From Octopus sinensis (lineage: Eukaryota), in NCBI RefSeq assembly GCF_006345805.1, contig NC_043009.1:71424001-71488000 (forward strand): a stretch of 64,000 nucleotides of DNA. The letters are read 5' to 3'. The position numbers were made by a program, and so were the translations under genes. Positions 9,956 to 50,027 of the stretch are shown piece after piece; the stretch's first letter is position 1; each line of letters starts with the position of its first letter. The notes under the pieces are model-generated. The model was given only the letters and a program-made list of their open reading frames with translations. It made no database searches and was not told the origin of the DNA.

Positions 9956-10531
9956 TTTATTGCCATCAGGATGACAGATGTTCAAATTTGGAAAAAAAAA
10001 CAAAAGCAAAAAAAAACTAATTCTGCTTTAGAAAAATAAAACTGGATTGATTTTTGTTAGAAAATATAGAAAGTAGAATTATCACCTGTTGGAATTAATT
10101 GGCAAAGGTAGTGATGGTCATCATAACAGTTGTGGTGGGAGACAGGAATCAGGGGACAAAGACAGACAGGTGAGGGTCAAACAAGGAAAAAAGAAATAAG
10201 GAAAACATTATCAACAAATATGATAGTGGCTATTAATTTTTTTGGTTTTCTTTTTTACAATTAAATTTTTTAATAGACCACTATTTTTTATTTTTATTTT
10301 TTTTTTATATTTTGGAAATGATATTTTTTATGAATTCAAACAGGAGACAACAAAATGTAGACGAAAAAAAAAAAACTGTTTTCAATGTGCAAATCCTGTA
10401 AAAGCTTCATTAGAAAAATACAGAATGCGTGCTTGATTTGTTTTTCCCCCACTTTTCACAGCAGCCTGATTTGAAAGAAGTAGCCAACACTAGCATACCT
10501 AGCAAACCCTGTTTCGGAGGTTTTCTTCTGC
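9956..10531 (-). other. Probable 3' UTR of the TUSC3/MAGT1 gene with candidate AATAAA signals at about 10287-10298 and 9956-9961
   Basis: Follows the TAA stop; AATAAA hexamers on the minus strand. The true end cannot be determined from sequence alone. Confidence 0.4.
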
Positions 10532-10547
10532 TTACTTGAACAGGAAA
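10532..10547 (-). CDS. TUSC3: TUSC3/MAGT1 terminal coding exon: (S)FLFK-stop
   Basis: Acceptor tttttccgctgtctttttcAG followed by T TTC CTG TTC AAG TAA; gives YPYSFLFK*, like the YPYSFLIK/YPYSFLMS endings of the family. Short, so less certain. Confidence 0.8.
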
Positions 10548-17270: not shown

Positions 17271-17901
17271 ACGCGTGTGCGCATGTGTGTGCGCACACGT
17301 GTGTGGGCATGCACATACTTCTGGACAAATGAAAAAGGATATTTTTTTTACAGATTTCAGTCAATCGACTGTAGCATAGCTGAAGCCATACCATCTGGGT
17401 ACAATCCATTGTACCCTTCTGGGGTACAATCAATTAGATCAGCCTCAAAAGATTGAAAGACAGGGTGAACTTGGATCGGATTTGACATAATAGACATTAT
17501 AACTGATAAGCCACAGTTTCAAATTGAACCCTATTAAACACCAGGTATTAAATAAACAATAATTTCCCAGTAGAAAATAACAACGATGCTACAAAGAGCA
17601 ATCAGTGGGACACATGTCTATGTTTCCATGGTAGCACCATATTTTCCCATTGAGCAAGACTTGGCTGCAGTTTCAGCGATTTCTGTTGCTTTGTTGTTTT
17701 TCATGAAATACGATCCACATTAAAACAAATGTTTTGTTTTGTTTTTGTTTTTTTTGTTCAGATATAAATGGGAGATAACTTTGGACAGGTTCCTACAAGA
17801 CTGACTGTCAACGTCACCATCAGCAGATGCTGTGTTGCCATACTTTCTGATTTGGCAGCAAACAGTCTGCCATGTAAAATATACAAAAAATGTGTGAGAG
17901 C

Positions 17902-17932
<31 letters not shown>

Positions 17933-18762
17933 CTGGCTTTAAAGATGAAAGAACAATTCTGAACTGTCATCTGCAGAATAAATAATATATGGAACTTAAG
18001 ACTAATTAATGTGTGTGTGCACGCATCTACAGAAAATTAAGTGCCTTGCTCAAGAACACAACACCTAGACTGAGCAATAGGTTGCATCCTCTAGCAAGGG
18101 GCTGCAAGTCCAGTCTGCTCAGCTAGAAATGAGTCCCAGTCCAAGAGATCTCTCTCTCTCTCTCTTCTTCTTCTTCTTCCAGTTGTTACATCCTCCTCCA
18201 CGTTAAAGCTCAGTGGGCAAAAGCATGGTCCATGCCACGGGCCATATTTGCTATAGAGTGACAGCTATGGCTTTTGGTCATACACACACAACTCATTGAT
18301 TGATTGATTGAATGTCATATGATGAAACACCAGTGTTCTGGATGCCCTGCCCCACCATCCATGCCTTTAAAAACCCACAATTTTCTTTGAGATGTTTCCC
18401 TGAGACAAACTATTATAGTTTATACTATTCCATGTTTGTATACAAAGCATGTTACAGACTCCAACAATTTAATCAGAACCGGTTGAATAAACAAAAAACA
18501 TTTTAATGTTTGTCTAAATAAATATTTCTAACATTAATACAAGACCATAAATGATAAACTTAGGTGAGCTTTGTGGCCAGAGTTGGTACTGAGCTGGACT
18601 CAATACTCTGCTGGTAATGTTTCCTTAACTCCAGAGAAGATTAAAGAGGTAAAGACAACCTTGGAAGGATTTGAACATCAAAGAATGTCATCACACAATT
18701 CACCACCTGTTGATTGATCTGAAGAAATATTTAAAAGAAAAAAAAACTAAGATTTTACTTAC

Positions 18763-18837
18763 TTTTTTTCTTGCCTGGATCACCTTTTAAATTATTAGCT
18801 TCATTAAGTAGAATGAAACCTATCACAACAGCAGCAT
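18763..18837 (-). CDS. TUSC3: TUSC3/MAGT1 exon 8: (N/Y)AAVVIGFILLNEANNLKGDPGKKK(I)
   Basis: 75 nt, phase 1 to 1; acceptor CCCTTAAC-ttcgtctcAG (U12 branch site, no long pyrimidine tract), donor GTAAGT; matches [24 protein letters not shown]. Confidence 0.95.
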
Positions 18838-18847
18838 CTGAGACGAA

Positions 18848-18855
18848 GTTAAGGG
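18848..18855 (-). promoter_or_regulatory. U12-type branch site CCCTTAAC upstream of exon 8
   Basis: CCTTAAC core, 10 nt (ttcgtctcAG) from the 3' splice site, the spacing typical of U12 introns. Confidence 0.9.
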
Positions 18856-20384
18856 TTTCAACACGAAGGAAATGTTACACAAATTGCAAAGTTTTGAACC
18901 AAGTAATGGAATTGTGATAAAGAAACACACACACACACACACAGAGGTTTAGTAGAACAATGAGGGGAAGAGAAGTCAATACACGAGTATATTTTTAATT
19001 TTTCTGACAATTAAGATATATTACATATATACACACACATATACACCTGTATGCATGCAGGTGTACATGTATTCATTTATTCTGATCTAAGGCTTCCTTC
19101 TCTCACTACTCTGAGTTTCACATTTACATTTCGCAATTCGAAATTTTCAGCTCACACACACACACACACACAGCATCTCAACCGAAAGTTCAAATGCCTG
19201 CTTTTGTAGAGTCTAAAAGTATAGCAAACTGCTTCTAGGCAGAAAAGTGATGTATCCGACAAAGACGAGTGATACAGGTTGACCAGATGATAATTGGTTA
19301 ATGAGAGAGAGACGTTAAGTAAATGTTATAAGCAAAAAGAAAACCACAAATATTTCATTGAAATATGGACACAACCTTTCTTCAATTCACATTGACCCTT
19401 GATTTGCCTTTCAATATTTCCCCCATGATCCTTGATGTTTTATTCTACAATTAGAATTAACAATAAAGTCACTAAGCAGCTTTATTGATGGGAGCTAATG
19501 ACTAAATGCCTATAAAGACCACAAGAATAGAGAGCAGAGGTGGGTAAACCACATCAAACCAGAAACACTATAAGAACTGTTAACTTGTACCAAACTGGAT
19601 TGTTTGTAGGTGAGAAAACAACCGAAGAACCAAGAAGCAATGAGTTGGGTGTCATCTTTGGAATGACTGTGTTGTGCGTGTGAGAGCAGAGTTCACCTGG
19701 CATCCCTTTTAGGCCACAAACACAGCCATGAACTAACCAACGACACAAACACTTCTCAGTTCTAAATAGACTCCGGCCTCAATCAAAGACAATAAAGTTC
19801 TAAAGCAATAAAATAAACAACAATTTTCTCAAGAAACATTAAAAACCCATTTGCTAGGTTTTTCTTAGCTGTATGTTGTTATTGTTTTTTCTTATAGTTT
19901 TTATTGCTTTTGTCATCACTACAACAACAACAATTTGTTTTATTTACTGCAAGGACAAGAACAACAATAACAAATTACAAAAAGTCTTCCTTTTTGTTTC
20001 CCTCAGTCCTGAATGAAATAAACAACACAACAATAATAAAAAAAAACTCTGCTGCTGCTCTCAGGCATTGGACAGTGGCAATGCTGGAGCATTTGGTTGT
20101 CTGGGTTCCAGGCCTATCTTCTGCACGAATTAACTCACTGGTCTACAAAGAAAGCTGCAGCTAAATTTTCTGTCTTTTGTCTATTTAAGTAATAAGAAAA
20201 CTAATCTATATTCTTTTATCTTCTTGCTTTCAGTTGTTTTATTTCTTTCCTTGGCTCATGTTTTTATTTTTGAAATTGTCTCCATATCAAAGAAAGCAAC
20301 ATAACTAAACACTGCACTCTATTTCATCTGGTTGCTCTACCAATTCCGTAATTTAACTTTGATATAACTTTGGAGATAAAAGAA

Positions 20385-20810
20385 GTTATACATGACATAG
20401 TCAACCCCAGGGTTTGATTTTATGAGGGGATTTTTTGAGAAGGGGGGGTAGTGAATGGAAGATAAAGTTGTCCCCAGTGACATTTGAACTTTGAATGTAA
20501 AACAAATGAACAGCTCAAAGCAATTTTACTGGTGCTCTACCGATCCTGTTTCCAAACCATTCCCAACCCCATGACCTGAAAATAAAACCTGATGGGTGAA
20601 ACGCACATTGGTTTCATATTCTGGCACAAGACCAGCAATTTGGGGGTGAGCTAAGCTGATTACATTGACCCCCAGCACTCACCTGGTACTAATTTTATTG
20701 ACCCCCCGCCACAAAAGATGAAAGGCAAAGTCAACCTCGTCAGAATTTGAACCCAGAACGTAAAAACAGAGGAAATGGTGCCAAGTATTTTGCCCAGTTC
20801 ACTGCCTTAG
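20385..20810 (-). mobile_element. Two older family-A SINE copies (further degenerate copies near 8290-8570, 12430-12600, 12940-13060, 18540-18700, 31480-31690, 37835-38015)
   Basis: Recurrent ..accccca..ggtactaattttattgaccc..gatgaaaggcaaagtcaacctc..gaatttgaac. Confidence 0.75.
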
Positions 20811-21769
20811 ATAAAAAAAAAAAATTTCTTCAAACAGAAATAATAATTAGAACAAATACCTGCTAATTGATGTTAATGTGGATTGTTGAAAAATTAAGTG
20901 AAGTTGATAATTTGCTTGACAAATAAAGAAAAAGGAATGATTTAGTGTAAGTTGGAGTATGTGTGTGGGGTGGAGGGGAGGAGCAATTATTTGGAGAGGA
21001 AACAAGAAAAAAAATAGCATGTGCACACCCACCCACGCACACACTGCTGCTGTCCAAATTGAAAAATGACAGCATTATTACAAAGTTTATTACTCCTAGC
21101 AGTATTACAAAGTGGCCATGACCCAAATGATTCACAAACGACCCATAGAGTCAGATGAGCAGCACACCACTCTAAGTAGTACAAAACTGGGTGCTCTGAT
21201 GGCAGTGGAGCGTTTGTCCTAGGAACAATACTTTTACAACATCATGCAAGCCTACACATACACAAATATGAAAATTAGCTCTATATTTGGTCACTTGATT
21301 GGCAAGAAAGAACAACCAAATCTACATCAAATCACACCCCATCATCTTAGGAAAGGACACACTCATTCATATGGTTCTAAGTTCCCTGCTCAAAGGAAAA
21401 TGATAGGATGGTCACAATTGGAATGCCGTTGATCTTAAATGTGTTTGATCAAAGCTGGCCTGGGGCTAAACAATAATAGATATGCATTCAAACCTACTTG
21501 TAATGCTAAGATTCAAAATAAGATCAGATATTACACAATAACCCTAGCCCTACCAAGCACTAAGTGACCAACCAATTATCTTAAGAATACTAAACAAGCC
21601 AATAACGGTAACTAAGAGCTATAGAGGAATTCTAGTCCCCCAATGAACCTGCTTCTCTTTTCTGGCACAAAGTCCTGCTTTCGTGTCTAATTTCGTGTAA
21701 TTCAACTTTAAAGTGAAATGCTTTGCTGCACACAAAGGCTGTCAGAGCTGATCCCAGGTTTGACAAACT

Positions 21770-22075
21770 CTTCTTCTTCTTCTTCTTCTAAATCCATTGC
21801 AAGGTTGGAAACCCTTCCACATTGTCAACAGCCCTCTCAGGGTCACAAGCATTTTCCCCCCTTAGCCTGTACACTTCACCTGAAGTGAAGGGCAGTGAGA
21901 ACTGAGCTAGTCTTCACCTAGAGAGATTCCACTTGTGGTCTCCTTTCAATCATTGCCATCTTGAGCTAGTTTCAGCTGCTGTGCCTATTTCCTTGGTGGC
22001 TTTCTTCAGTTGTCTGTGTTCCAGGCCTATCTTCTGCACGAAATAACTCACTGGTCTACAAAGAAAGCTGCAGCT
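21770..22075 (-). mobile_element. Hero/NeSL-like RLE non-LTR retrotransposon 3' relic with (AGA)n tail
   Basis: SFLCRPVSYFVQKIGLEHRQLKKATKEIGTAAETSSRWQ*LK resembles the Hero-type AAEKASRWLWLKR terminus. Confidence 0.55.
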
Positions 22076-22877
22076 AAATTTCCTGTCTTTTGTCTATTTA
22101 AGTAATAAGAAAACTAATCTATATTCTTTTATCTTCTTGCTTTCAGTTGTTTTATTTCTTTCCTTTGCTCATGTTTTTATCTTTGAAATTGTCTCCATAT
22201 CAAAGACTTACATGACATTATCACAAATCCATCTTCAAAATGCTGCTCCATGCAAACATTCTCAGATAAGAAAACATTAGAAAACAATATTTGCCATACA
22301 ACTGAATACTGAATGTGAAGAAACAAGAGGAACCATGTTGGTATAATTGCTGAGAGACAAACAATGGCACAAATGTGCAAACTCTGAACTGATATTGTAC
22401 AACATCAAAGAGAGAAAATGGCCAGCATTCATTTAGAAAATAAATAAAAGCAGTGCATGATAAGAAATGAAGAAGTTTTGCAAAATAATTTCTTGAAAAG
22501 GAGCAAAGCACATATGAAACATAGAGGCACAACAATGTAGAATTTGCAGAAAGTTTAAGATTTTACAAGAGAAATGCAATGAAGAGAGAATTTAAGAGGA
22601 AATTATTGACAGTCGCAATTTTAATATAGCACACACATACACAAAAGTATATACACATGCACACACACATATGTAAATACATATATCACCATCATCATTA
22701 TTATCATTTTAATGACCACTTTTCTATGGCTGCATGAGGAGGACAGACTCTTTTGGAGACAGATTCTCCACAACTGGATACCTTTCCTGTTGCTAACCCT
22801 CATCATTGGTTTCCAAGAAAAATAATATTTCGCCATGACCAAACAGGTTTCCACACACAATTAGAAACAAATGATAC

Positions 22878-23242
22878 TCTTTTTACTCCTTTCCTTGTCT
22901 CAGTCATTCGACTGCGGTCATGCTGGAGCACCACCTTTACTCAAACAAATCAAACCCAGGAATTATTCTTTGTAAGCCTAGTACTTATTCTATCGGTCTC
23001 TTTTGCTGAACTGCTAGGTTACAGGGACATAAACACACCAGCATCGGTTGTTAAGTGATGTTGAGGGGGACAACCACAGACACACATACATATAATATAC
23101 CAGAGGCTTCTTTCAGTTTCCATCTACCAAGTCTGTGCACAAGGCTATAGTAGAAGACACTTACCCAAGGTGCCATGCAGTGAGACTGAACCCGGAACCA
23201 TGTGGTTGGGAAGCAAGCTACTTATCACACAGCCACTCCTGC
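22878..23242 (-). mobile_element. Family-B SINE
   Basis: Reverse complement of the 54893-55295 consensus; a partial second copy follows at about 23290-23460. Confidence 0.88.
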
Positions 23243-23503
23243 TTGCAATGACAGAGACATTCCTTTACAACTCTCAATGTCAAGGAAACAGTAACACACA
23301 CACACACACACACATCCAATGGGTTTCTTCCGATTTCTCTCTACCAAATCCACTTGCAAGGTTTGGCCAGCCCAAGGTTATAGAAGAAGGCGCTTTTCCA
23401 AGGTGTCCAGCTGTGGGATTGAACCCAGAACAATGTGGTCAGGAAACAAGAGGCAAGAGTTTCATGCACTGACACTTCGTAAGTGACTTCTGCTGATTAC
23501 TAA

Positions 23504-23509
23504 TGTGTG

Positions 23510-23590
<81 letters not shown>
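23504..23590. repeat. (TG)(AT)n(AG)n compound microsatellite
   Basis: Direct reading. Confidence 0.98.
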
Positions 23591-23595
<5 letters not shown>

Positions 23596-23914
23596 AGCCA
23601 ATGTATCCAGATGTGTTTCCAAAGCAAACAATACTCTTAAACTGAATAAAACTTGCTAACAATCAATAAACAACAATTCCGTTTGTGTGAGATTTCGGTG
23701 AGACAGACCAATCCTTCAGATTTATAAACTAAGTTCAAAGAAGCGGGAAAATATATAAAAAGTAAAGTAGACACGTGGATCTTTTTCTTTTTACCCGTTC
23801 CTGTCATTAGTGTGTGGCCAGGTTGGGTTAACAGCTTTACGTGTTTTACTCAAAGATCATATCAAGCCCAGCATTTCACTCTGGTGTTTACTTCATCAAT
23901 CACATAGAGTGTAC

Positions 23915-24333
23915 CAGGCATGGCTGTGTGGTAAGAGGCTTGCTTCCCAACCACCTGGTTCTGGGTTCAGTCTAATGGTGTGGCATGTTGGGAAAGTGTC
24001 TTCTACCACAGGCTGACCAAAGCTTTGTGAGCAGATTCAATAGAAGGAAACCAAAAGAAACCCATCGTATACGTGTGTGTGTGTGTGTGTGTGTGTGTGC
24101 AAAATTATGTGTGTTTTGATGTTTGTGTTTGTCCCCCACCACTGCTTGACAACCAGTATTAGTGCGTTTATGTGCCCGAAACTTAGCAGTTTGACAAAAG
24201 AGACTGATAGAACAAGTAGCATTCTAAAACAGATAACGAGTTCTGGAGTCAAGTGATTCAACTAAAAATCCTTTCCAGGCAGTGCCCCAGCATGAGCACA
24301 GTCTAATGAGACTGAAACAAGTAAAAAACAAAG
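23915..24333 (+). mobile_element. Family-B SINE
   Basis: caggcatggctgtgtggtaagaggcttgcttcccaacc..gactgaaacaagtaaaa. Confidence 0.88.
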
Positions 24334-24549
24334 AAGACAGCCTGGCAACAGCTGAATGTCAGATGAAACAAACAAACAAGCTTTAAAACGTAATGAGTTT
24401 TGCCACTGGAGAAATGCGAGGTTAAAACTGAAATTTAACAAAGAGACAAGTCTAACCAGGGAAAGGAAGAGTTGAGGTTCAATCCATTCTGCAAATTATA
24501 GTCACCAAGTAGAAGAAGGATCAGTAAATATAGAATTATTGTCAGGAAG

Positions 24550-24915
24550 TAGAAGTGGCTGGGTGGTAAATAGCTTGCTCACTAACCACATGGTCCTGGA
24601 TTCAGTCCCACTGAATGGCACCTTGGGCCAGTATCTTCCACTATAGCCTCAGGCTGACCAAAGCCTTGTAAGTGGATTTGGTAGATGGAAACTGAAAGAA
24701 GCCCCTTGTATATATGTGTGTGTGTGTTTGTTCCCCCACCCCACATTAACTTGACAACTGATGTCGGTGTATTTATGCCCCTGTAACTTAGCAGTTCAGC
24801 AAAAGAGACTGATAACATAAGTACTAGGCTTACAAAGTCCTGGGGTCAATTTGCTCGACTAAAGGCGGTGCTCTAGCATGGCTGCAGTCAAATGACTGAA
24901 AAAGTAAAACGGTAA
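24550..24915 (+). mobile_element. Family-B SINE
   Basis: gtggctgggtggtaaatagcttgc..ggcaccttgggc..aaatgactgaaaaagtaaaa. Confidence 0.88.
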
Positions 24916-25529
24916 GATAGAAATTATTGAAATAATTCTTCACACACAGTAATTCTTCAGATTGACAGGGAACATAAACAGGGACCTTAAAACTAGGCCA
25001 TTCTCCAAATAATGATTATGCAACCAATTTCCCAGCAGTCGATCAGCAGCTACCATTTTTAATTATGTGAGGACACTTAAATTTCCAGTGATCATCATCA
25101 ATGACTTTTTTGCTATCAAACCATCACAACACACAAGCACCTGTTGAGTATCGGGGTCAATGGGATCAAATAGACCCTTCCTGAACCAAAAAAGCCTTGT
25201 GCCTATAATAGAAAGGGTTTTAATGATTATTATTTCTAGTAATGGTTAAGGAGGCAAAAATTCAATTTATTAACATGTAAAAGAATCAGTAAAAAGTATT
25301 TGTTCTAACCAATGAAGAATTTCTTGAATGAAATATTTCAGCAATTTTAAAATCTTGAACAATTTTGAAATTGGGTAAAAATTTTTAGCAGCTGGACACA
25401 GGAATACAGCGGAAACCGTTAGTTTTCACATAATAAAGAAATTCATTTTACTATTGCAACAGATGTAGAATCTTTTAGGTGGTGCCATAATTAGGCTTAC
25501 TCCTGTTTCAACATTTATAGCCATTATTG

Positions 25530-26050
25530 TCATCATCATCATCATTATTATGATTATTGAGTGAGAGAGCAGCGTATGCCATCAAAGTGATGCTGGGGTA
25601 CAAATATACGAAGCCCAATATACCCATCATGACTACCTGTCTGATAAGGATACACCATATATATGCAGCATGGTGATCCCATATCAAGATAAACAGCACA
25701 TAACCTTTTTTTTTAAGGTTGAATAGCCTATCTCACTCAAAAGGTCCCTGAATAAGGTTTGTTTAAGGATGAACTCGTGTTTCCAAAGGTGAATAAGTCA
25801 AACCCCAAGCAATCCCTCTCAACGCATGGCCATGATGCTCTCCACTACTTCTGCTCGTGATCAGAGGTGCACATATTGTCAGCCACCAAGGGACATGCTC
25901 AACTGGTGGAAGTCAAGCAAATCTGTGACATTGAGCAGAATATTTGCTGTAGTCCATCTTTTATACCAAAACAAAACAATGAACATGATAACACTTCCAA
26001 TGAATTAAGATCAGAAGCCATGAGAGCCACTGCCTGGTACTGCATCAGGG
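25530..26050 (-). mobile_element. SINE-like element with RTE-style (TGA)n tail (related tails near 11255-11530, 30530-30810, 55310-55625, 61340-61580)
   Basis: Ends in ..aataatgatgatgatg; shares RTE 3'-UTR-like motifs (gggcatccagc, catgccagcatggaaaa) with the other copies. Confidence 0.6.
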
Positions 26051-26769
26051 CATTTATTATTATCATCATCATTATCCTCATCACCATCATTATCATTGTT
26101 AGTATTATTATCTTTACAATAATTACCATTATTATCAACTAAAGAGTAATTTCCAAGGGGTTTCAGGCCGCACAGCTGCAGAAGTACTGGACCCTAATTC
26201 AGAGAGAAAAATATTGTTTAAATTTCAAAACATTTTCCCTATTTGACAAAAGGTCTTTCTCCTCCCAAAAAATTCTTCACAGTTCTTGAGTTATAATGAA
26301 TTTTACCAACAGAGATGACCCCTAACTTTCCCTCTTTTCGTTATCCTGACAGGTGAGGAAGGTGAGCTTCTCTTACAGGTGAGGAAGGTGTTCTTTGAAC
26401 AGGCCATGCTATCTTTAAAGTGTTATGTTACCCTCTCTATTAGTAAATCATCATCAACATTTAACATCTGTTTTCCATGCTGGCATGGATCGGAGAGTTT
26501 GACAGGCGCTGACAAACTGAAGAGCTGCAACAGGCACCAACTGTCTGTTTTTGCCTTGTTTCTCAACTGGACGAGGCCCTTCCTAATGTCGTCTCTACTT
26601 TACAGACTGTATTCAGTACTTATTATATTGACTCATAAAACGATGACCTCAGCAGATTTTCAACATAAATACACATCATAACACATTTGGTCAGACATGC
26701 TCCCATTTCTCCTCAATAATTTCCAGCAGAGACACAAAGCCAAACATTTGGAGCAATGGCTAGAGACAA

Positions 26770-27335
26770 TTACATCAAGCCAGAACTTTGTGCGTATTTT
26801 ATTTTACCAATCCCAGAAGGGTGAAAAGCAAAGTTCAAATCTTTGACAAGATTTGAACTCAGAATATTGAAACTAATACCTCAAGACACTTTGTAATACT
26901 TCCGCCAATCCACTGTCCTAAGCCAATAATAATCTTCTCTCCTAAGCCTGACACTTTGGAGGAGAGGGCTAAGTCAATTACATCAACCCCACACCTCAAA
27001 TGGTATTGGTTTTATATCGACCCTGAAAGGCTGAAAGGGCAGTCAACCTTGGCAGAATTTGAACTCAGAACAGAAGAGGCAGAAGAAATGCCACTGAGTG
27101 TCTGACGTGCTAACATTTCTGCCACCTTCAATAAAATGTTTCTAAAATAGGAACAAGGCCTAAAATAGGGGGGGGGTGATTACATCAACCACATCACTTA
27201 ATTAAGTTCTTTATTTTATCAACCCCAGACAGGTGAAAGGTGAAAGATGACTTCAGTATCATTTGAACTCACAATGTAAAGAGTCACAACAAATGCCATG
27301 TGGTATTTTTTCCAGCACTTTAATGATTCTGCTAA
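26770..27335 (-). mobile_element. Three tandem older family-A SINE copies
   Basis: Three recurrences of gaaaggc(t)gaaagg..gatttgaactcag about 200 bp apart. Confidence 0.75.
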
Positions 27336-27546
27336 TCCAAATTAATAATTACAACAACAACAACAATAATGAGAAAAAATGAAGGAAAGAGTTGAAGATG
27401 TGAAGAAGAATGAACCTTGTTGGAAAGATTTAAACATAAAAGAGAATGGAAACTCGAAAGGAAGAAATGAAATTTTGATAATGAAACAAAATGGGGGGAC
27501 AGGGGGGATGGAAACAAACAAACAAACAAAAATGTAAGAGCAACCG

Positions 27547-27555
27547 AAAAGATAC
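27547..27555 (-). promoter_or_regulatory. U12-type 5' splice site GTATCTTTT of exon 7B
   Basis: GTATC core with C-to-T at +6, a tolerated U12 variant; homologous position to the 7A donor. Confidence 0.8.
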
Positions 27556-27619
27556 AGTTAAAAAATATAATATAGGACTCTGCAACAAACTGCAGTTCAA
27601 ATGATGGAACGATGAACTG
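27556..27619 (-). CDS. TUSC3: TUSC3/MAGT1 exon 7B, putative mutually exclusive paralog of 7A: QFIVPSFELQFVAESYIIFFN(Y)
   Basis: Exactly 64 nt, same phases, open frame; acceptor atttcttttatttttcAG, donor GTATCTTTT. Aligns without gaps to 7A (7/21 identical: I,S,Q,F,V,E,Y; QFVAESY core); T+AT gives Tyr with exon 8. Not in the ORF track; transcript support is unknown. Confidence 0.85.
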
Positions 27620-30600
27620 CTGAAAAATAAAAGAAATTCAACAGAAGGTTCAAAATATACAAAAAAATATCAAGATATGACAAAGCAATAACTAACATGT
27701 GCCAAACAGAAGGTTAAGAGACATGCGAGGGGGGGGGTTCTTTGTCTCTCTCTTCTCCACACCATTTTTTTGTATATGGGAATAACAATCATTAGCAGAA
27801 AGCCAGATGCAAATAAAATATGAGAAAGAATATAAAGTGAAACCAAGCAAAAATGGGGTGAAAAAGATTGCAATATATGTCAATGCTGAGATGAAAAAAA
27901 AGGAAAAAGAAGAGCAGCATAACCAGTGAGAAGAAGAAGAAGAAGAAGAAGGAGAGAAAAAGAGCAAACGAGCTAAACTGGAATCAATTATGAAAACAAT
28001 CAAGCAAAGAAGAAATTTTTTTTTGTCTCTTTCCTAATAATCTATTGTTGATAGAGAATGGACAAAGGATTCCTAAATCAAAGCAGATTTCAGGAACATA
28101 GAATTATAAAAACAGAAAGAAAAATATTGTTTTTCTTCCCTTTTTTCTTTTTTTTTTTTTTAAAGAAATATTTCCACAAAATGTCTCTGACTGTAGATAA
28201 TTTCTTAAATTAGACAATAAAGATTTTAGCTGAAACGGTAGAAAGAACAATAAAAAGAATGGGGAAAATTATGAAAGAAAAAAAACAAAAAAAAAACGAA
28301 GGAAATCAGTCAAGTGTGGAAATGAGTGAGTTGGAAGAAAGACTAACAGATTTCATACTCTATGAACAAATTAGAATTAAGTTAACGAAGATATAAAAAT
28401 AAGAAAAGGAAAACAATCAAAAATCCAGGTGAGTCAATATGTTGGTCAGGACAAAAAAAAAGTCTTTGCAGGAAGTAAAAACAGTTTTCAGTGTAAATAA
28501 GAGCAGATAGCAAACTAGTTTTCAATTAAATACATTCAGCTATTTAATTAGGAGTTAAGAACCATTCCACATGATCAAAAGATAATGCATGCTAATTCTA
28601 CAGAAGTAAAACATGCAGCTCTACCCAATAAATTCAGTTTATAAAAGAAAATGTAGAAAGACTGGTGCTATGGATACCAATGCTATGTGATGCCTGAGTT
28701 TTTTCAATTATTTGAACATTTAATAACTTATCTTCAATTTTCATGCCAAACAAGGGAGAAAATTTCAAAGCTCTGGAGCAGATAACAAAAGCTGTTATAA
28801 TCTCTCAAAAAATTAACTCTCAGACTAACCTGAAAAATTGAATGCTGTTGGAATATAATTTGCTTGCAACAATAAGCCACATTTTTTTAAATGTCATTTG
28901 ATTCAAAATTCATGAGAGATGAGATAATGAAGGAGACGACGACGTTAACAGGCAAATGACCATCAAATCCATTTCGTGGTAAAAGATGATAAAATTCTGC
29001 TACACAGGAAGGGCTTTTGCTTACAGCTTATGTCAACTAAAAGAAGGAACAATCAAAAGAAACAAAGGGGCTGCTGCTGAGAGCAAGAATCGTCATCATC
29101 ATCAATGGCTGCTTAGGAGAGAATTGCTACTGCAAGTGGTGGAGATATCTATTTATATAATCAGACCGTCCGTCCGTCAGATAAGCAGACATATGTCTTT
29201 AGACAAACAAAATCACACAAGAATGGCTTCAACCAGGGTCGACTCTGGAAATTACTGGAAAAAATAACAGGCCTCATAAGTGGTAAAAACTAGGCATTGG
29301 TGAGAGGAAGCAGAAACACACACACACACACACACACACACCCACAGCAGCTGACTTTATGGGTAGTGATGGCCATGATGCTAATAATACTCAGTCTTTC
29401 CTGTTCCAGAAACACAAAAGAAACAAAAAATCAATACTAGTAGGCAAAACAAAATAATCAATCAATTCTTTTTCACCAGAATTCTTTGTATTATTTTTTT
29501 AGAAGAAAAAAGGCAATTTAGCAAAATAGCTTTGAAACGAAGTTGGGGTGGGGGTGGAAGTGGGTAAAACATAAAAGGTTTAATTAACTCAAACAGTTAT
29601 GTTGAAAATTAAATTTAAGAAAGAAACTTTAGCAATTACATTTGAATATTCTTTTTACTACATCAAAAATAATTTCATGTTTTTAAAACCTTACAAATAT
29701 AATGTTATTAATACAATTAAACTCTTTTTATTTTAACATTAGCAACAAACAAACGAAAACAAGCATTTTTTTTCTCTCTCCTAAGCTTGGAACTTTTACT
29801 TTGGTTAAGTAGAGACGTTATGTCCATTCACAAAGAACATAAGCATTTTGAATGAAACGTGGAACAACTTAGAAACCAAAACTGGTTCACTGACTCATCT
29901 CAGAATCTTACAGATTCTGAGATGTTATATTGATAGGGTTTTCTTTCAGAGGTGTACACTACATTTACATTTAATTAAATATAGAAACAACAACAAAAAT
30001 GTTCTTGTTTGTTTTTTTTTTAATCAAAATTAGGATTTCCTTCAAAATTAAAATTAAAACCAAAGTAAAATTAAAGAAAATTTGTTGAATAATCTACAAG
30101 ACAATTTTTAAGAACCAAATCTCTAACTCAGTGAGATTTTACTTAAAATCTTTTGAGTACTAAACTAGACATAGCGAAACAGCTAATCCAGTGCTCAAGC
30201 ATGAGGGGCCCCTTTGGCTGATGCTGAGATAGAAATACTTAACAAAAAATAATATTCATGAGAGTCTCGTCTAGCATTGGCTAAAAGTTCGTTAATTTCA
30301 AGAGAACAGTTGATTATATAAACCTCAGTATTTGTCTGTGTACTACAAACCCAAGGAAAATTCATCTGAGCAGGACTTGAACTCAAAACTTTGGGGAACC
30401 ATAACTTTGTAGTCCAGAAGTTCATTTTGTAAGCATGCAGTGTTGGGTTCAGTCCCACAGTGCAGAACCTAAGGCGAGTGTCTTGGGAAACAAAAAGCTG
30501 CATTCAGCTCATCGTGAGTGCATGCGTGCATGCAAATGTGCATGTATGTTGATACTGCACTTGTCACCATTTCAGTGAAACAGCGATAATGTTGACATTC

Positions 30601-32024
30601 TTTGTTGCCCTTCTGATTGGTTGCTCTACACTCTCAAAGACCTTTGAAATATAAAAATCGTTTCTCTGAAAAACAGGTGAGGGCTGGCAGCAGGAAGGTC
30701 AGCCAGTCACATTTTCTGACCTCAAATCAATTCTCATCCAACCCATACAAGCATGGGAAACAGAGGTTAAGTGAACGAACAAAGAAAGAATGAACACAAA
30801 TGGATCTCTGAGACATTGGCAGACTGAAAATTGTGGATGTGTTGAGTGATGTAAAGAAGGAAAGGAATTCTGAAGAGAGTTTCATCCTTCCAGCAATGAA
30901 AAAAATCAAATGATTAAAAGAATACACAATACAAAGTGAAACCAGAACAAGAGAATGAAAGAACCTGAAGACATTCTAGGTTGGATGCCAACAATGGATT
31001 GTCCTGACAATAAATTGTCTTTGGACAAACGAATGGCTAATGAATTGTCTCACCACCATGGACAAAGGGTTTTACTGATGTAAAGTAGTTCAGTTGGATG
31101 CAGAATTCTTTTGTTTTCTTCTTCTTCTTCTTCTTCTTTGATTACTCAGATTTATGTGACTACCTGACAGCCAACAGGTTTCACTCCCTGCTTCATAGCT
31201 GAGTTGTTAGAGATAAGAAGATCCCCCCCCCCCGCCACTGCCCTCTGTCCCAGCAGCTGTAAAAGTAAAGTGCTACAACAAAATCGTTCAACTCAATGAA
31301 AAGAAAATAATTAATTACAGCTCAGGTGAGTGTATTCACCTGATAAAAGATATCATTGATTGTATTCGATAACACAATAACAGTCGTATAACATTTTTTC
31401 TGCTTTTGTTGCCGATAATGAACAAGTATTAAAAAATAAACATTTCTTATTCAAGATAAATAACAACAATGAAAATGGTTTCTGATTAAGGTACAAGACA
31501 TGTAATTTTGAGTGGAAGGGCTTTAGCCAACACCTTTAGCCAACACCCTCAACTCCAGGACTCAACTGGTACTTTATTTTATTGAGAGATGAAAGGTAAA
31601 GTCAACAAGCTGACAACAGAATTTGAACTCAGAACATAAAGAGCTGGAATCAAATACTGCTTGGATGATTCTGCCAGCTGACTGCCAGGAGGAGGAGGAG
31701 GAGTAGGAAGTAAATCTGTTTGTTTGTTTGTGTGTGTGTGGGGGGGGGTATGTATGTATGTATGTATGTATGTGGGTATGTATGTATGTGGGTATGTATG
31801 GATATATTGCAATGGCATAGAAAATATTTCAACTGGAGAGAACAAACTGATGCAGTAAATTCCAGCCAAAAGCCTTGTGAAGGATGAAAGAAATGTCAGA
31901 GAGTGGAGGGAAGAAAAAAAGAAATGCACAAATATTATAATAAAAAAAAAGAACAAAATAATAGAGCAATTAGGAGGAGAAAGAGAGAGTGTGACAATGT
32001 GAGCAGCAATGAGTGAGTTGGTTA

Positions 32025-32033
32025 AAAGGATAC
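32025..32033 (-). promoter_or_regulatory. U12-type (minor spliceosome) 5' splice site GTATCCTTT of exon 7A
   Basis: Exact match to the established U12 GT-AG donor consensus RTATCCTTT at the exon boundary. Confidence 0.9.
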
Positions 32034-32097
32034 TCAGGCACATAACTAAGTAAGTTTCCACTACAAACTGGCCCTGACTGCTACCATGGATATAATG
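32034..32097 (-). CDS. TUSC3: TUSC3/MAGT1 exon 7A (canonical-type): HYIHGSSQGQFVVETYLVMCL(N)
   Basis: 64 nt, phase 0 to 1; acceptor gtttttgcattgcAG, donor GTATCCTTT (U12 consensus). Matches SYIHGSSQAQFVAE of human TUSC3/MAGT1; A+AT gives Asn with exon 8. Confidence 0.95.
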
Positions 32098-33286
32098 CTG
32101 CAATGCAAAAACATTTAGGGCTCAGTTACAGAATGCAGTTGAAAGCTAGAATGAATTTAAGGGCAAAAGTACATAAATAAAAAAAAAACCTTTGAATTTA
32201 AATGATTTCAGCTGGAACAAAAACAGGGTAAACAGAGATGACATTTGCTGGATCCTGATTCCATTCAAGCACCACCACCCTTTTTTGTTCTTCCTTTCTT
32301 TCTTTTGGGACTGCATACATCATTAAGAGAGAGAAAAGAAAAGACTACTAGTGACGAACAGGCAACTAATTATCTAATAATGCAGTGACCACTACACATG
32401 TAACATTGCGTTTTCTTTCTTTCCCATTCACTAAAGTTGTAACAGTCACTGGAAAAAGCCTACTTTACTCTGGACAGGAAATGTAATCTCTGTTTACTCA
32501 GCGTATGTATAAACACATTTCAGACACTAGCTTCTAATACTTGTTTGCAATGGACTCTTGTATATTTTCAGATCACAAAGTAAACAAAAAGAAAACTTTG
32601 TATGCAGTCAAGCCTTTCTGAAAACTCAAGTTGCCAATGTTTTGCTACAAGAGTGAAACCTCATCCAGATTCCAGAATTGTTACCCTAATTGTTGCTGTT
32701 TGGTTCAAAGCCAACCTTCAAGCAGAATATGATCAAAGACTTTCTTCCCATCGTTCACATATCCCAAGCTACCGTGTGTCAATGTGACCTTCTTTGTTTA
32801 AAGCAGTTGGCGGTGATTTGGAAGGGATTTTGACAAGCGGTTCAAGTAGAATGAATTTATCATTCACAATAACCCCATTCACCCTACACAGGACAAACAT
32901 TACATAACAAGAGTTCATATGCTTCTAATAGAAAGCCCTACCAAGCATTTTTCTGTTTCTTATACCATAATATAAAATTTAAAAAAAACAATATATAATA
33001 TTAGTATAATGATGCATGCATGAGACAACGGTGTATATGTTGTGATGTGAACCAAAAACTTCAACAAGATTTAAAAAGGTCAAATACAGAACTCATTAAA
33101 CAGATTATAATCAATACAAACTCAATTATTGATTCGAAAGTCAAAAATGATCCACAAACAACAGACATGAATATAATTGGCAAAATACAAAAAAAACATT
33201 CAGAAAAACAACAAAATTCTTTTGTACAAATTACATTTGAAGCAAATGTATGTAATTATCTCTAAAAACAACTGACATACAAAACA

Positions 33287-33369: not shown

Positions 33370-34570
33370 ACAATGACATCCAGTTTAGTGGTTGGTGTAA
33401 CTTTCAATTCCAAAGTTGGGTGCCAGACCTTCCAGGATCTTCCATATAAAATATCACTGCATATCTTTTACATCTTCTCTCTCAGGAGTCTCAGAGTCTC
33501 AGTCCTTCCGACCTCTCCCACCAGTTCATCTGTTGCACCAAGTCAATCTTCTTTTTGCAGAGGCACTAAATTGCCTCAAGTTCTGCTGTTAGTTTAACAC
33601 TTTGTAATGATCACAGCTGGAAGCAGTAAACGCAGGCAACTGAAAACAAATGCTCTACTCCGGAGTAGCTTCATGTCCTTTTCATGTTGTTTTATTCCAG
33701 TTGCTTTCATCAGCCAACTTGCATACTGCCTTCAGATCTTTCTCCAGTTTTCAGATGTCATCAGCACCCTTTAAACCCTAGCAACACATTTGTATCATCA
33801 GCACAACAGGTGACAGTGGCTGACTGTACAACTGACGGTATGCCCGAGAGAACCACCACAAAGTGAGGGACTCCACTGAGAACTGATGTCTCCTCACAGA
33901 CAATACCATTGGCTGCAACTGTAGCACTTCTACAACGTTTACTTTTTGAAAAGGAATGCAGCCACTCTTGTAGCTTTTTGGCTGATGCCAAAGTCACACA
34001 GTTTGTGACATCATCCCATGATCAATTCTATGGGAAGGCCTCGGCAATATCAGGAAAATATCACATCTACATTTGAGTGGTTGGGCTGTGGTTTCAGTGC
34101 TCAGTCATAACACTGTAGTTGTTGTGTGAGGTCGCTCGATCCTGCTCAGAAGACTTCCTGCATTTTGGGGAGCAAGATATTTATTTTCCAGGAACAGGAT
34201 CAACCTCCCCCTCCTCCTCCTTCTGATAATGGATTCCATATTCTTGCTAAGATGTGAGATCAGAAATGTTTAGCATCTGCTCTGCTCCCTCCTTTACGGA
34301 CAGGGCATCTTATACCTTCTTTTAACATTTTAGGAAGTTTGCCACATGCAAGGAAACTCTGGAAAAGTATCCGTAGTGGGTTTGTGAAAACTTTCTCGCA
34401 TGTCTATAAAAGAATAACTAAAAACCCACCTGGGCCCACTGCTGAATTTGATTCCATCTCAACTTTTACATCCAATGTAATTGATAATTGCCTTTTTTCT
34501 GTGGACTTCTGCCACCAAGCTTGTTTTGCTCCTGTTTATTGTCTTTCGGCCAAGTGAGAACACTTTTGCT
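33370..34570 (-). mobile_element. Old CR1-like LINE RT relic
   Basis: WLHSFSKSKRCRSATVAANG..ETSVLSGVP..TCCADDTNV resembles CR1 RT motifs (SGVPQG, YADD); heavily disrupted; boundaries approximate. Confidence 0.75.
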
Positions 34571-34845: not shown

Positions 34846-34897
34846 ACATACACACACATACATAAATACATACACACACATACATAAATAAATACAT

Positions 34898-34928
<31 letters not shown>

Positions 34929-34985
34929 TACATACATACACACACACACACACATACACACACACACATACATACATACACACAC

Positions 34986-35016
<31 letters not shown>

Positions 35017-35127
35017 TACATACACACACAAACATACATAAATACATACTTACATACACACACACATACATAAATACATACTTACATACACACACACATA
35101 CATAAATACATACTTACATACACACAC

Positions 35128-35157
<30 letters not shown>
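34846..35157. repeat. (ACAT)/(AC) compound microsatellite, about 310 bp
   Basis: Direct reading; source of the CVCV ORFs. Confidence 0.98.
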
Positions 35158-35158
<1 letters not shown>

Positions 35159-35495
35159 GACACCCACCCATACATATAATAGGTAGTCCATTGGTGTCCA
35201 ATGATGACAAACTCTTATATTCTCAGCAGCGAAAGTGCATGTGACCGCACAGTCCAAAGCTGGAAGAAGCACACAGGCAGCCACAGACGTCACAGCAGCA
35301 GTCTCTGTTGCCTGGACTGAAGCAGATGCTGTCCTCTGACATCTTTCTCTTGCAGCATCATGACACTCTCAACCGGCCATCTTTGAAAGCAGCTGCTGCT
35401 TGTGAGGTGAAGGACCTCCACCTTGATCTGTCTGCAGCAGAGGCTCCGAGTCTGCAGCAGCTAATGCCACACATACATACAATGTGTGTGTGTAC

Positions 35496-35560
<65 letters not shown>

Positions 35561-40390: not shown

Positions 40391-41029
40391 AAATTTATGG
40401 TCTGAATAGCTGATGATTTTCAATTGCAGACATCCTATGCTGTCTATATCTACTGGTTGACAGAATACTCTAGATACGATCACGATACGACTCAAAGCAA
40501 TTGTCCCTATCGACAGAGACGCATTCAGGAAATCCAGTTGGTATCTTCAAGACATAGATATTGTAGTGTCTTCATTTTTGTGTTGAGGTTAGATGGTGGT
40601 GGGGAAAGTAGAACTGAGGTGTGGAGATGCGTTGGCCAAACAATTTTGGTTTTCTCATCTTCATTCTCAGTTGCTGCTGCCTTTGTTTTCATTGTTATTG
40701 CTTTAATTTATTTTGTTTAATTGTTATTGTTGTTGATATTGTTTTACAACACTGGGGGTGCCTTGTTTTAAAGGTGGGGAGGCAAGAAAATTCAATGCAA
40801 TACTTTCTTGATATTTTTAAAGAAATGGGCAAATGTTACAACATAAATCACAAATTCTTCCATAAAGGATGAAAATATATTGGAACCAAGCAGCAACAAT
40901 TGTGTCATAGCTGCTGATGTGACAGACACACATCAAGGCATCAAGCACTTTGAATACAAATGTTTGGAAAATGGTTAAAATAAAACAAAACTTATGAGCA
41001 AAAATGTTGCAGACACCACAAAAAAAAAA

Positions 41030-41037
41030 ATAATAAC

Positions 41038-41111
<74 letters not shown>

Positions 41112-41140
41112 TAATAATAATAATAACAACAACAACAGCA
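41030..41140. repeat. (AAT)n microsatellite grading into (AAC)/(AGC)
   Basis: Direct reading. Confidence 0.98.
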
Positions 41141-49937: not shown

Positions 49938-50027
49938 CATTTGGCCTGTGTGTGGATTTCTATGCATGAATGGAGGTCCTCGGATATGATTCCACATCTG
50001 ACCTGATGTCATTGCAAATATAATGAT
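49938..50027 (-). CDS. TUSC3: TUSC3/MAGT1 exon 6: [30 protein letters not shown]
   Basis: 90 nt; acceptor ttcttctcctcAG, donor GTAAGA; invariant [12 protein letters not shown] motif of OST3/OST6 proteins. Confidence 0.97.

What the first reader, a model, noticed from the sequence alone, without database searches (positions are those of the whole stretch)
18838..32033. U12/U2 hybrid-intron mechanism that would hard-wire the exon 7A/7B exclusivity
Seen: the 7A donor is GTATCCTTT and the 7B donor GTATCTTTT (U12-type). A single U12 branch site, CCCTTAAC, lies 10 nt before the exon 8 AG. Both 7A and 7B have U2-type pyrimidine-tract acceptors, and there is no CCTTAAC close to the 7B AG (only a distant tcttaac about 90 nt upstream). 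Established: U12 donors do not normally splice to U2 acceptors, and this spliceosome incompatibility explains the mutually exclusive exons of vertebrate JNK/MAPK8-10. Inference: the 7A-7B intron is an unspliceable hybrid, so exon choice is set by the upstream U2 acceptor, an independent invertebrate example. The resulting minor introns are long (13,196 nt from 7A; 8,718 nt from 7B).
Basis: partly seen in the sequence, partly recalled or inferred. Interest (0 to 1): 0.9.

Follow-up and report, generated by a model that had tools for sequence, protein, structure and literature searches.

The report
U12/U2 interlocked alternative exons in octopus TUSC3
An octopus gene for an oligosaccharyltransferase subunit (TUSC3/MAGT1) has two alternative copies of one exon, wired between a major-type and an ancient minor-type intron just as in vertebrate JNK genes, so the two copies probably cannot be spliced to each other; this is a new example of a known mechanism.

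Summary
The gene lies on the minus strand and is the Octopus sinensis/vulgaris TUSC3/MAGT1 (OST3/OST6) orthologue.

- **Exons:** 7A (32097-32034) and 7B (27619-27556) are homologous 64-nt exons with AG/pyrimidine acceptors.
- **Donors:** GTATCCTTT (7A) and GTATCTTTT (7B).
- **Exon 8:** preceded by CCCTTAAC 10 nt before its AG.
- **Intron lengths:** 13,196, 8,718 and 4,414 (hybrid) nt.

The intron after exon 7 is an ancient U12-type intron. The same donor and branch site sit at the same position in twelve species from ten other taxa, from a sea anemone to a fish, and human TUSC3 and MAGT1 are listed minor-intron genes.

Exon 7B is real. The exact 7B isoform is annotated in three Octopus species and is conserved under purifying selection in Argonauta.

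The layout (U2 donor; two U2 acceptors; two U12 donors; one U12 acceptor) is identical to published MAPK8/9 (JNK) and TMEM87A/B. It is therefore a new member of a known kind.

Caveats:
- Double inclusion or double skipping also shifts the frame, so NMD is a redundant safeguard.
- No read-level data were available here.

New here: scallop and mussel carry a variant exon at the same place, also with a GTATCT donor, and Lingula has an unannotated extra copy.

The parts
49938..50027 (-). Exon 6 (90 nt, [30 protein letters not shown]), constitutive. It ends in phase 0 and is followed by the U2-type donor GTAAGAGT (49937-49930).
32098..32122 (-). 7A acceptor: agccctaaatgtttttgcattgcag. U2-type with a moderate pyrimidine tract (0.59) and no U12 branch motif.
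32034..32097 (-). Exon 7A (64 nt, HYIHGSSQGQFVVETYLVMCL), the canonical copy found in all animals examined.
32025..32033 (-). 7A donor GTATCCTTT, a perfect U12-type GT-AG 5' splice site. Octopus-Argonauta intron conservation stops exactly after this 9-mer.
27620..32033 (-). Hybrid interval 7A-7B (4,414 nt) with a U12-type 5' end and a U2-type 3' end. Predicted to be unspliceable as an intron.
   Evidence: literature
27620..27644 (-). 7B acceptor: ctgttgaatttcttttatttttcag. U2-type with a strong pyrimidine tract (0.77).
27556..27619 (-). Exon 7B (64 nt, QFIVPSFELQFVAESYIIFFN), a divergent duplicate of exon 7. It is annotated as isoform X2 in O. sinensis, O. vulgaris and O. bimaculoides, and is conserved in Argonauta.
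27547..27555 (-). 7B donor GTATCTTTT, U12-type with C-to-T at +6. It is identical in Argonauta, and the same GTATCT occurs on the variant exon of scallop and mussel.
   Evidence: rule, UFD1 precedent
27713..27719 (-). TCTTAAC about 92 nt upstream of the 7B AG. It is too far away to act as a U12 branch site for 7B.
18848..18855 (-). U12 branch-site motif CCCTTAAC. The AG ends 10 nt downstream. It is an isolated conserved island (TCCTTAAC in Argonauta, 13 nt from the AG).
18838..18839 (-). AG 3' splice site shared by the 7A-8 intron (13,196 nt) and the 7B-8 intron (8,718 nt).
18763..18837 (-). Exon 8 (75 nt, (N/Y)AAVVIGFILLNEANNLKGDPGKKK), followed by the U2-type donor GTAAGT.
25245..25252 (-). 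Decoy-like perfect TCCTTAAC with an AG 9 nt later, inside the 7B-8 intron. It is not next to any recognised exon and does not lie in a block conserved with Argonauta.

Best explanation
**What it is.** This is the TUSC3/MAGT1 (OST3/OST6-family oligosaccharyltransferase subunit) gene of Octopus sinensis/vulgaris, on the minus strand.

**Origin.** Its exon 7 lies immediately upstream of an ancient GT-AG U12-type intron. The exon was duplicated in tandem together with its U2-type acceptor and its U12-type donor.

**Resulting layout:**
- exon 6 (U2 donor)
- 7A (U2 acceptor, U12 donor)
- 7B (U2 acceptor, U12 donor with T at +6)
- exon 8 (U12 branch site and acceptor)

**Permitted and forbidden joins.** Only four joins are chemically permitted: 6-7A and 6-7B by the major spliceosome, and 7A-8 and 7B-8 by the minor spliceosome. 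7A cannot be joined to 7B because of a U12 5' end and a U2 3' end. Exon 6 cannot be joined to exon 8 because of a U2 5' end and a U12 3' end. Mature in-frame mRNA therefore carries exactly one of the two exons.

**Commitment step.** Commitment is a race between 6-7B, which deletes the 7A donor, and 7A-8, which deletes the 7B acceptor. The mixed choice 6-7A plus 7B-8 would leave the 4.4-kb hybrid interval retained as a dead-end product.

**Second safeguard.** The 64-nt exon length shifts the frame on double inclusion or double skipping, exposing such products to NMD.

**Shown versus inferred.**
- Shown: the sequence layout, its conservation, and annotated exclusive isoforms.
- Inferred: actual use of the minor spliceosome, the order of the reactions, and any role of the weaker 7B donor.

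**Protein consequence.** By hydrophobicity and family alignment, exon 7 appears to encode the end of the loop after the second membrane helix and the first half of the third. Exon 7B replaces the almost invariant HGSSQ motif.
For: - **Gene identity.** P0001 (O. vulgaris/sinensis) contains the window's translation at 100%. It matches Pfam OST3_OST6 at E=1e-97. The closest solved structure is human MAGT1 in 6S7T.
- **Sites.** Documented.
- **7B is real.**
  - The exact 7B-swap protein is in the collection as XP_029643993.1 / CAI9732340.1, and O. bimaculoides has X1 and X2.
  - Argonauta has 7B with 4 synonymous and 2 conservative changes and an identical donor.
  - 7A shows 5 synonymous and 0 non-synonymous changes.
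- **Ancient U12 intron.** GTATCC donors and a branch motif 8-13 nt from the AG occur in 12 canonical exons from cnidarian to teleost. Human MAGT1 and TUSC3 are listed as minor-intron genes. Octopus sinensis was used in a minor-intron survey.
- **T at +6 is acceptable.** See the published rule and human UFD1.
- **Same layout published.** Described for MAPK8/9 and TMEM87A/B.
- **Conservation pattern.** Between the two octopods, only the exons and their splice motifs are conserved.
- **Frame.** Double inclusion or double skipping gives stop codons.
Against: - No RNA-level data were available. There are no junction or lariat reads and no minor-spliceosome perturbation.
- Frameshift plus NMD alone could explain why only exclusive isoforms are annotated.
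- The 7B donor departs from the consensus at +6.
- Exon 8's last 18 intron bases are fairly pyrimidine-rich, so some U2 use cannot be ruled out.
- Two other branch-site-like motifs with nearby AGs lie in the long intron.
- The motif count in the window is at chance level.
Confidence: 0.72

Rival explanations
1. Reading frame and NMD do the real work. The U2/U12 layout is just the unavoidable by-product of duplicating an exon that happens to precede an old U12 intron, and it adds nothing to exclusivity in vivo.
For: - Both exons are 64 nt, and double inclusion or skipping gives premature stops.
- About 60% of human mutually exclusive clusters are frame-incompatible, against 0.79% with U2/U12 incompatibility.
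- Any tandem duplication here must create this layout.
Against: The two safeguards are not exclusive. Spliceosome incompatibility would act before any aberrant mRNA is made, and this is the accepted reading for the identical JNK layout. U12 donors are kept on both copies in octopods, scallop, mussel and Lingula, although conversion of a donor to U2-type is a known evolutionary path.
Confidence: 0.15
2. The 7B donor GTATCT has converted to a U2-type site, and 7B-8 is removed by the major spliceosome using exon 8's acceptor. Only 7A-8 would then be a minor intron.
For: - C-to-T at +6 weakens the U12 consensus and adds one match to the U1 consensus GTAAGT.
- The bases before exon 8's AG (cttaacttcgtctcag) are mostly pyrimidines.
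- 3' splice sites shared by both spliceosomes are known.
Against: - The 7B donor lacks G at -1 and G at +5.
- The motif is conserved through +8 in octopods, scallop and mussel.
- The published rule admits T at +6, and human UFD1 has the same donor and is classed U12.
- No separate U2 branch or pyrimidine tract is conserved before exon 8.
Confidence: 0.08
3. Exclusivity is directed by competing long-range RNA structures (docking and selector sites), as in insect Dscam or mammalian ATE1.
For: The introns are long. A conserved stretch of about 20-40 nt follows the 7B donor.
Against: A blastn comparison of the Octopus region with Argonauta finds no conserved intronic block other than the immediate splice-site flanks and dispersed repeats. 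No docking or selector candidates were seen. No dedicated complementarity scan was run.
Confidence: 0.05

Closest known systems
Vertebrate JNK genes MAPK8/MAPK9 (/MAPK10), exons 6a/6b (7a/7b in later assemblies)
   Same: - The layout is identical: an upstream U2 intron; two tandem homologous exons, each with a U2 3'ss and a U12 5'ss; a hybrid U12/U2 interval between them; and one downstream U12 3'ss.
- The outcome is the same: exactly one exon is included.
   Different: - Different gene family (an OST subunit rather than a kinase) and different phylum.
- Here the introns are much longer (8.7-13.2 kb minor introns).
- Here the downstream copy has a weakened donor (T at +6).
- No regulator such as Nova is known, and there is no experimental minigene evidence.
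Human TMEM87A/TMEM87B exons 11/11a, and the five human MXE clusters with U2/U12 incompatibility (Hatje et al. 2017)
   Same: Competition between a U2 3'ss and a U12 5'ss yields mutually exclusive exons. The class is recognised but rare, at 0.79% of human clusters.
   Different: Those cases are human or vertebrate. I could not check whether their alternative exons are homologous duplicates or whether both carry U12 donors.
The conserved U12-type intron of human TUSC3 and MAGT1 (minor-intron-containing genes)
   Same: Orthologous intron position and phase. A teleost TUSC3 has GTATCCTTTC ... TTCCTTGAC, with the AG 13 nt after the motif, at the same exon boundary. Both human genes are listed as MIGs.
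   Different: The vertebrate, cnidarian, gastropod, chiton and protobranch loci examined have a single exon 7 and no detectable second copy.

Membership tests
U12-type (minor-spliceosome) GT-AG intron | 5' splice site matching RTATCCTT (one C at +5/+6 may be T), with no requirement for G at -1 or +5 | tested here: met
   7A has GTATCCTTT (9/9). 7B has GTATCTTTT, with T at +6. The rule is quoted and a human UFD1 precedent.
U12-type (minor-spliceosome) GT-AG intron | Branch-site motif TCCTTRAY close to the 3' splice site (roughly 10-20 nt) and no long pyrimidine tract | tested here: met
   CCCTTAAC is followed by an AG ending 10 nt after it. The motif is a conserved island in Argonauta, where the distance is 13 nt. 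The intervening 10 nt are pyrimidine-rich but short.
U12-type (minor-spliceosome) GT-AG intron | Positional conservation with U12-type introns in orthologous genes | tested here: met
   Same position, phase and motifs in 12 canonical exons from Exaiptasia to Perca TUSC3. Human TUSC3 and MAGT1 are listed as minor-intron genes.
U12-type (minor-spliceosome) GT-AG intron | Removal depends on U11/U12/U4atac/U6atac snRNPs, and the host has them | not testable with these tools
   Only literature is available: Octopus sinensis was included in a minor-intron conservation survey, and molluscs are relatively rich in minor introns. No snRNA gene lies in the window.
JNK-type interlocked U2/U12 mutually exclusive exon pair | Two adjacent homologous exons of compatible length and phase | tested here: met
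   Both are 64 nt and phase 0 to 1. They share 7/21 amino acids, including the QFV.E.Y core.
JNK-type interlocked U2/U12 mutually exclusive exon pair | Both exons have a U2-type 3'ss and a U12-type 5'ss. The upstream exon has a U2 5'ss and the downstream exon a U12 3'ss. | tested here: met
   Exon 6 donor is GTAAGAGT. The acceptors have a pyrimidine tract plus CAG and no nearby branch motif. Donors and branch site are as above.
JNK-type interlocked U2/U12 mutually exclusive exon pair | Transcripts contain exactly one of the two exons, with no joined or doubly skipped products | tested here: inconclusive
   Annotated isoforms X1-X4 in O. sinensis and X1/X2 in O. bimaculoides each contain exactly one. 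No read-level data were available.
JNK-type interlocked U2/U12 mutually exclusive exon pair | Converting the hybrid interval to a uniform type abolishes exclusivity | not testable with these tools
   This requires a minigene experiment.

The most novel reading that the evidence does not exclude
The TUSC3 exon-7/U12-intron junction is a recurrent, or very ancient, lophotrochozoan hotspot for JNK-type mutually exclusive exons.

- Octopods, pteriomorph bivalves (scallop, mussel) and probably the brachiopod Lingula each carry a second exon-7 copy that keeps a U12 donor.
- In every case the variant copy has the weaker donor: GTATCT in octopods and bivalves, GTATCCTAAA in Lingula.
- The variant copy also loses the near-invariant HGSSQ motif.

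If these duplications are independent, this would be convergent tuning of U12 donor strength to set the default exon. It would also point to a conserved need for a second form of the OST subunit.
Probability: 0.3. Interest if true: 0.6.

Novelty: new member of a known kind. Interest (0 to 1): 0.45.

Why it matters
Spliceosome incompatibility is the textbook but rarely documented way of hard-wiring mutually exclusive exons. The published cases are essentially vertebrate (JNK genes, TMEM87A/B, five human clusters).

A second gene family shows the identical layout in molluscs and probably a brachiopod, built on an intron that has been U12-type since before the cnidarian-bilaterian split. This shows that the arrangement arises readily whenever an exon upstream of a minor intron is duplicated, and that it can persist across octopod and across bivalve orders.

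It offers natural replicates for testing how U12 donor strength and U2 acceptor strength set exon choice.

It also flags a so far undescribed alternative form of a conserved oligosaccharyltransferase subunit, which differs in a nearly invariant loop motif and half a membrane helix.

Tried and rejected
- **Short 7B peptide search.** A 42-aa 7B-centred query to the protein collection found nothing, because only cluster representatives are indexed by words. The 7B isoform was instead found by exact look-up of a 7B-swapped full-length protein.
- **Failed locus look-ups.** The O. bimaculoides X2 locus and the Ostrea edulis locus were not on record. Oysters and a third octopus genome therefore could not be examined at DNA level. 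No squid, cuttlefish or Nautilus orthologue appeared among the best 120 hits, so the age of 7B within cephalopods is bounded only by Octopus plus Argonauta.
- **Orthology of octopod 7B with the bivalve variant exon.** End-anchored nucleotide identity and BLOSUM scores show no special affinity: 12 and 4, against 27-41 to canonical exons. Common origin is neither supported nor excluded.
- **7B as a pseudo-exon or annotation artefact.** Rejected.
- **ATATCCTTT at 17342 as an AT-AC donor in intron 8-9.** It follows an A-run with no exon-like frame, and about one chance match is expected, so it was treated as chance.
- **Rfam scan of the window.** No hits.
- **Supplement of the paper listing human minor-intron genes.** Not held, so the human intron number was not read directly. 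A teleost TUSC3 locus was used instead.
- **Not done.** No PWM or intronIC scoring was possible offline. No dedicated scan for docking or selector RNA structures was run beyond the conservation comparison.


Full report
**1. Gene and anatomy**

The finding lies on the minus strand. A TUSC3 probe and then the octopus protein itself map eight coding exons of a TUSC3/MAGT1 orthologue in the window.

| Exon | Window coordinates (minus strand) |
|---|---|
| (unnumbered) | 59218-59136 |
| (unnumbered) | 56298-56241 |
| (unnumbered) | 52754-52614 |
| exon 6 | 50027-49938 |
| 7A | 32097-32034 |
| 7B | 27619-27556 |
| exon 8 | 18837-18763 |
| exon 9 | 16853-16763 |
| last coding exon | near 10547 |

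The exons for residues 1-134 lie beyond the window's end.

The window's 7A translation is 100% contained in the 339-aa protein P0001 of Octopus vulgaris/sinensis. P0001 matches Pfam OST3_OST6 at E=1e-97. It aligns end to end with human MAGT1 of the OST-B complex, PDB 6S7T chain H, at E=1e-140.

**2. The observation**

- 7A ends ...TGCCTGA|GTATCCTTTTAAC.
- 7B ends ...TTTAACT|GTATCTTTTCGG.
- Exon 8 is preceded by ...gaaaCCCTTAACttcgtctcAG|ATGCTG. The AG ends 10 nt after the motif.
- The introns are 13,196 nt (7A-8) and 8,718 nt (7B-8), and the 7A-7B interval is 4,414 nt.
- Exon 6 has an ordinary GTAAGAGT donor.
- Both 7A and 7B have CAG acceptors behind pyrimidine-rich sequence (pyrimidine fractions 0.59 and 0.77). 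Neither has a branch-site motif nearby; the TCTTAAC at 27719 is about 92 nt from the 7B AG.

The bare number of motifs in 64 kb is what chance gives: 2 GTATCYTTT against 1.67 expected, and 3 YCCTTAAC against 3.97 expected. What is not chance is position. The only two donor motifs in the window, on either strand, sit exactly at the 3' edges of two homologous 64-nt exons. A branch motif sits 10 nt from the next exon's AG.

The long intron also contains TCCTTAAC at 25252 (AG 9 nt later) and TTCCTTGAC at 23285. These are decoy-like sites next to no known exon.

**3. Exon 7B is a real exon**

- I replaced the 7A peptide in P0001 by the 7B peptide and looked up that exact 339-aa sequence. It is in the collection as XP_029643993.1 (O. 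sinensis isoform X2) and CAI9732340.1 (O. vulgaris). O. bimaculoides has the corresponding X1 and X2.
- All six annotated Octopus proteins contain exactly one of the two exons.
- In Argonauta hians (locus L001) both exons are present in the same order. 7A is at 34354-34417 and 7B at 41963-42026.
- Between the two octopods, 7A shows 5 synonymous and no replacement changes. 7B shows 4 synonymous and 2 conservative changes. Both are under purifying selection.
- Including both exons, or neither, shifts the frame and gives early stops.

**4. The downstream intron is an ancient U12-type intron**

I fetched the orthologous loci of Lottia, Haliotis, a chiton (Liolophura), Solemya, Mizuhopecten, Mytilus, Lingula, a teleost TUSC3 (Perca) and a sea anemone (Exaiptasia).

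- In all of them a 64-nt exon 7 ends in the same phase and is followed by GTATCC(T).
- Exon 8 is preceded, 8-13 nt before its AG, by a TCCTTAAC- or TCCTTGAC-like motif. Chiton, Solemya and Exaiptasia carry weaker variants.
- Human MAGT1 and TUSC3 are both listed among minor-intron-containing genes (PMC7507305).
- Octopus sinensis was one of the species used in a pan-eukaryotic minor-intron survey, which notes that molluscs are relatively rich in minor introns (PMC10639083).
- Between Octopus and Argonauta the introns are unalignable except for short flanks:
  - After 7A, conservation stops exactly at the end of GTATCCTTT.
  - Before exon 8, the conserved island is AAA(C/T)CCTTAAC.
  - After 7B, it is GTATCTTTTC plus about 20-40 nt.

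The 7B donor has T instead of C at +6. [quoted passage not shown] It is also the donor of the human UFD1 intron, GTATCTTTTT, classed U12-type by intronIC (PMC7367187). From my own knowledge, and not tested here, a U at +6 would still wobble-pair with the G residues of U11 and U6atac. It would therefore give a weaker but usable site.

**5. Mechanism**

The layout is:

- a U2 donor on exon 6
- two U2 acceptors
- two U12 donors
- one U12 branch site and acceptor

The permitted joins are 6-7A and 6-7B (major spliceosome), and 7A-8 and 7B-8 (minor spliceosome). 7A-7B and 6-8 are hybrid and should not be spliced.

This is exactly the arrangement described for JNK2. [quoted passage not shown] A later review summarises it as 'two U2-type 3'ss and two U12-type 5'ss' in an interlocked configuration, with TMEM87A/B as further examples (PMC8329584). 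A human genome-wide survey found five such clusters, 0.79% of the total (PMC5740500).

Following that model, the committing event is a race between 6-7B, which removes the 7A donor, and 7A-8, which removes the 7B acceptor.

By inference, the mixed choice 6-7A plus 7B-8 would leave the 4.4-kb hybrid interval in the RNA as a dead end. The system prevents wrong joins, but it does not by itself guarantee a productive mRNA. The 64-nt length adds NMD as a second safeguard.

**6. Beyond octopus (new in this stage)**

| Taxon | Variant exon | Position relative to canonical exon 7 | Variant donor | Canonical donor |
|---|---|---|---|---|
| Pecten maximus (X2), Mytilus | Isoform with a 19-aa variant segment (FHPDLLKQTILESLILLGI; VDSDPLKQTILESGIVCLL) replacing the canonical 21 aa | protein-level only | not examined | not examined |
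| Mizuhopecten (L006) | 58 nt, 26437-26494 | downstream, upstream of exon 8 | GTATCTTTG | GTATCCTTA |
| Mytilus edulis (L010) | 58 nt, 10216-10273 | downstream, upstream of exon 8 | GTATCTTTA | GTATCCTG |
| Lingula (L005) | 64 nt, 3586-3649 (GYIVTRSDGQFIAETYIVLCL), intact but unannotated | upstream | GTATCCTAAA | GTATCCTTA |

- In both bivalve loci the variant exon has a U2-type acceptor.
- All four downstream variant exons (two octopods, two bivalves) carry GTATCT. All twelve canonical exons carry GTATCC.
- No second copy was detected in Lottia, Haliotis, the chiton, Solemya, Perca or Exaiptasia.
- Sequence comparison gives no special affinity between octopod 7B and the bivalve variants. I cannot tell whether there was one ancient molluscan duplication with losses or several independent ones.
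- Oyster 'isoform X2' proteins end ...FFLSILTN, which is the translation of the retained GTATCCTTAC... donor. They are annotated retention of this U12 intron.

**7. Rivals**

- *Frame/NMD only.* It certainly contributes, but it does not exclude incompatibility.
- *Conversion of the 7B donor to U2-type.* Unlikely. The donor lacks G at -1 and +5, is conserved through +8 across classes, and is paired with an acceptor that has the minor-type anatomy.
- *Competing RNA structures.* No conserved intronic blocks were seen beyond the splice-site flanks, although I ran no dedicated complementarity scan.
- *Artefact.* Excluded.

**8. Novelty and score**

The mechanism is established. Applying it to TUSC3/MAGT1 in invertebrates appears undescribed: a full-text search for TUSC3 with 'mutually exclusive exon' returned only unrelated papers. 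The isoforms themselves already sit unremarked in NCBI annotation.

I class it as a new member of a known kind. It is well supported at the sequence and comparative level and untested at the RNA level. Interest is moderate. It generalises the JNK model to another gene and phylum and offers natural replicates, but it does not overturn anything.

Noticed in passing
L006 26437-26494 (Mizuhopecten); L010 10216-10273 (Mytilus edulis); proteins P0148, P0158, P0160: Scallops and mussels have a 58-nt variant exon 7 (..LKQTILES..) between the canonical exon 7 and exon 8. It has a U2-type acceptor and a GTATCT donor, the same layout and the same +6 T as octopod 7B. It is annotated as isoforms in Pecten maximus and Mytilus.
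   Followed up: yes
L005 3586-3649 (Lingula anatina): An intact, unannotated 64-nt second copy of exon 7 (GYIVTRSDGQFIAETYIVLCL) lies upstream of the canonical exon, with an AG acceptor and donor GTATCCTAAA. The swapped protein is not in the protein collection.
   Followed up: partly
proteins P0130, P0132, P0133 (Saccostrea, Crassostrea 'isoform X2'): These oyster isoforms end ...FFLSILTN.., which is read-through translation of the GTATCCTTAC donor. They represent annotated retention of this U12 intron.
   Followed up: partly
window 18755-18762 (minus strand), just after exon 8: A tandem donor AAAAAAA|GTAA|GTAAAATC. Use of the second GT, 4 nt downstream, explains O. sinensis isoforms X3 and X4, whose C-terminus is frameshifted (..[15 protein letters not shown]..) and lacks the last membrane helix. 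Argonauta has GTGAGTAC here, with no tandem site.
   Followed up: partly
window 25245-25252 and about 23277-23285 (minus strand): A perfect TCCTTAAC (AG 9 nt later) and a TTCCTTGAC (AGs 6-16 nt later) lie inside the 7B-8 minor intron. They are potential cryptic U12 3' splice sites and do not lie in blocks conserved with Argonauta.
   Followed up: partly
window 27512-27555 (minus strand), downstream of the 7B donor: About 20-40 nt after the 7B donor are conserved between Octopus and Argonauta (GTATCTTTTC(G/A)GTTGCT.CTT.., then T/G-rich repeats). After 7A, conservation stops at +9. This may be an intronic element helping a weak donor.
   Followed up: no
window 17334-17342 (minus strand): ATATCCTTT, an AT-AC-type U12 donor consensus, lies in the intron between exons 8 and 9. 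It directly follows an A-run with no exon-like frame upstream, and is probably chance.
   Followed up: partly
window 23100-23240, 23330-23450 and 45622-45780; microsatellites at 34852-35156 (ACAT)n, 35494-35560 (AC)n and 41029-41126 (AAT)n: Dispersed SINE-like repeats occur with multiple copies also in the Argonauta locus. Long microsatellites fill the introns. Rfam finds no RNA family in the window.
   Followed up: no
proteins P0114 (Astyanax) and P0080 (Ficedula): Two vertebrate TUSC3 predictions carry an unrelated 21-aa segment, or an insertion, at exactly the exon 7 position. These are probably gene-model errors around the minor intron rather than true alternative exons.
   Followed up: no
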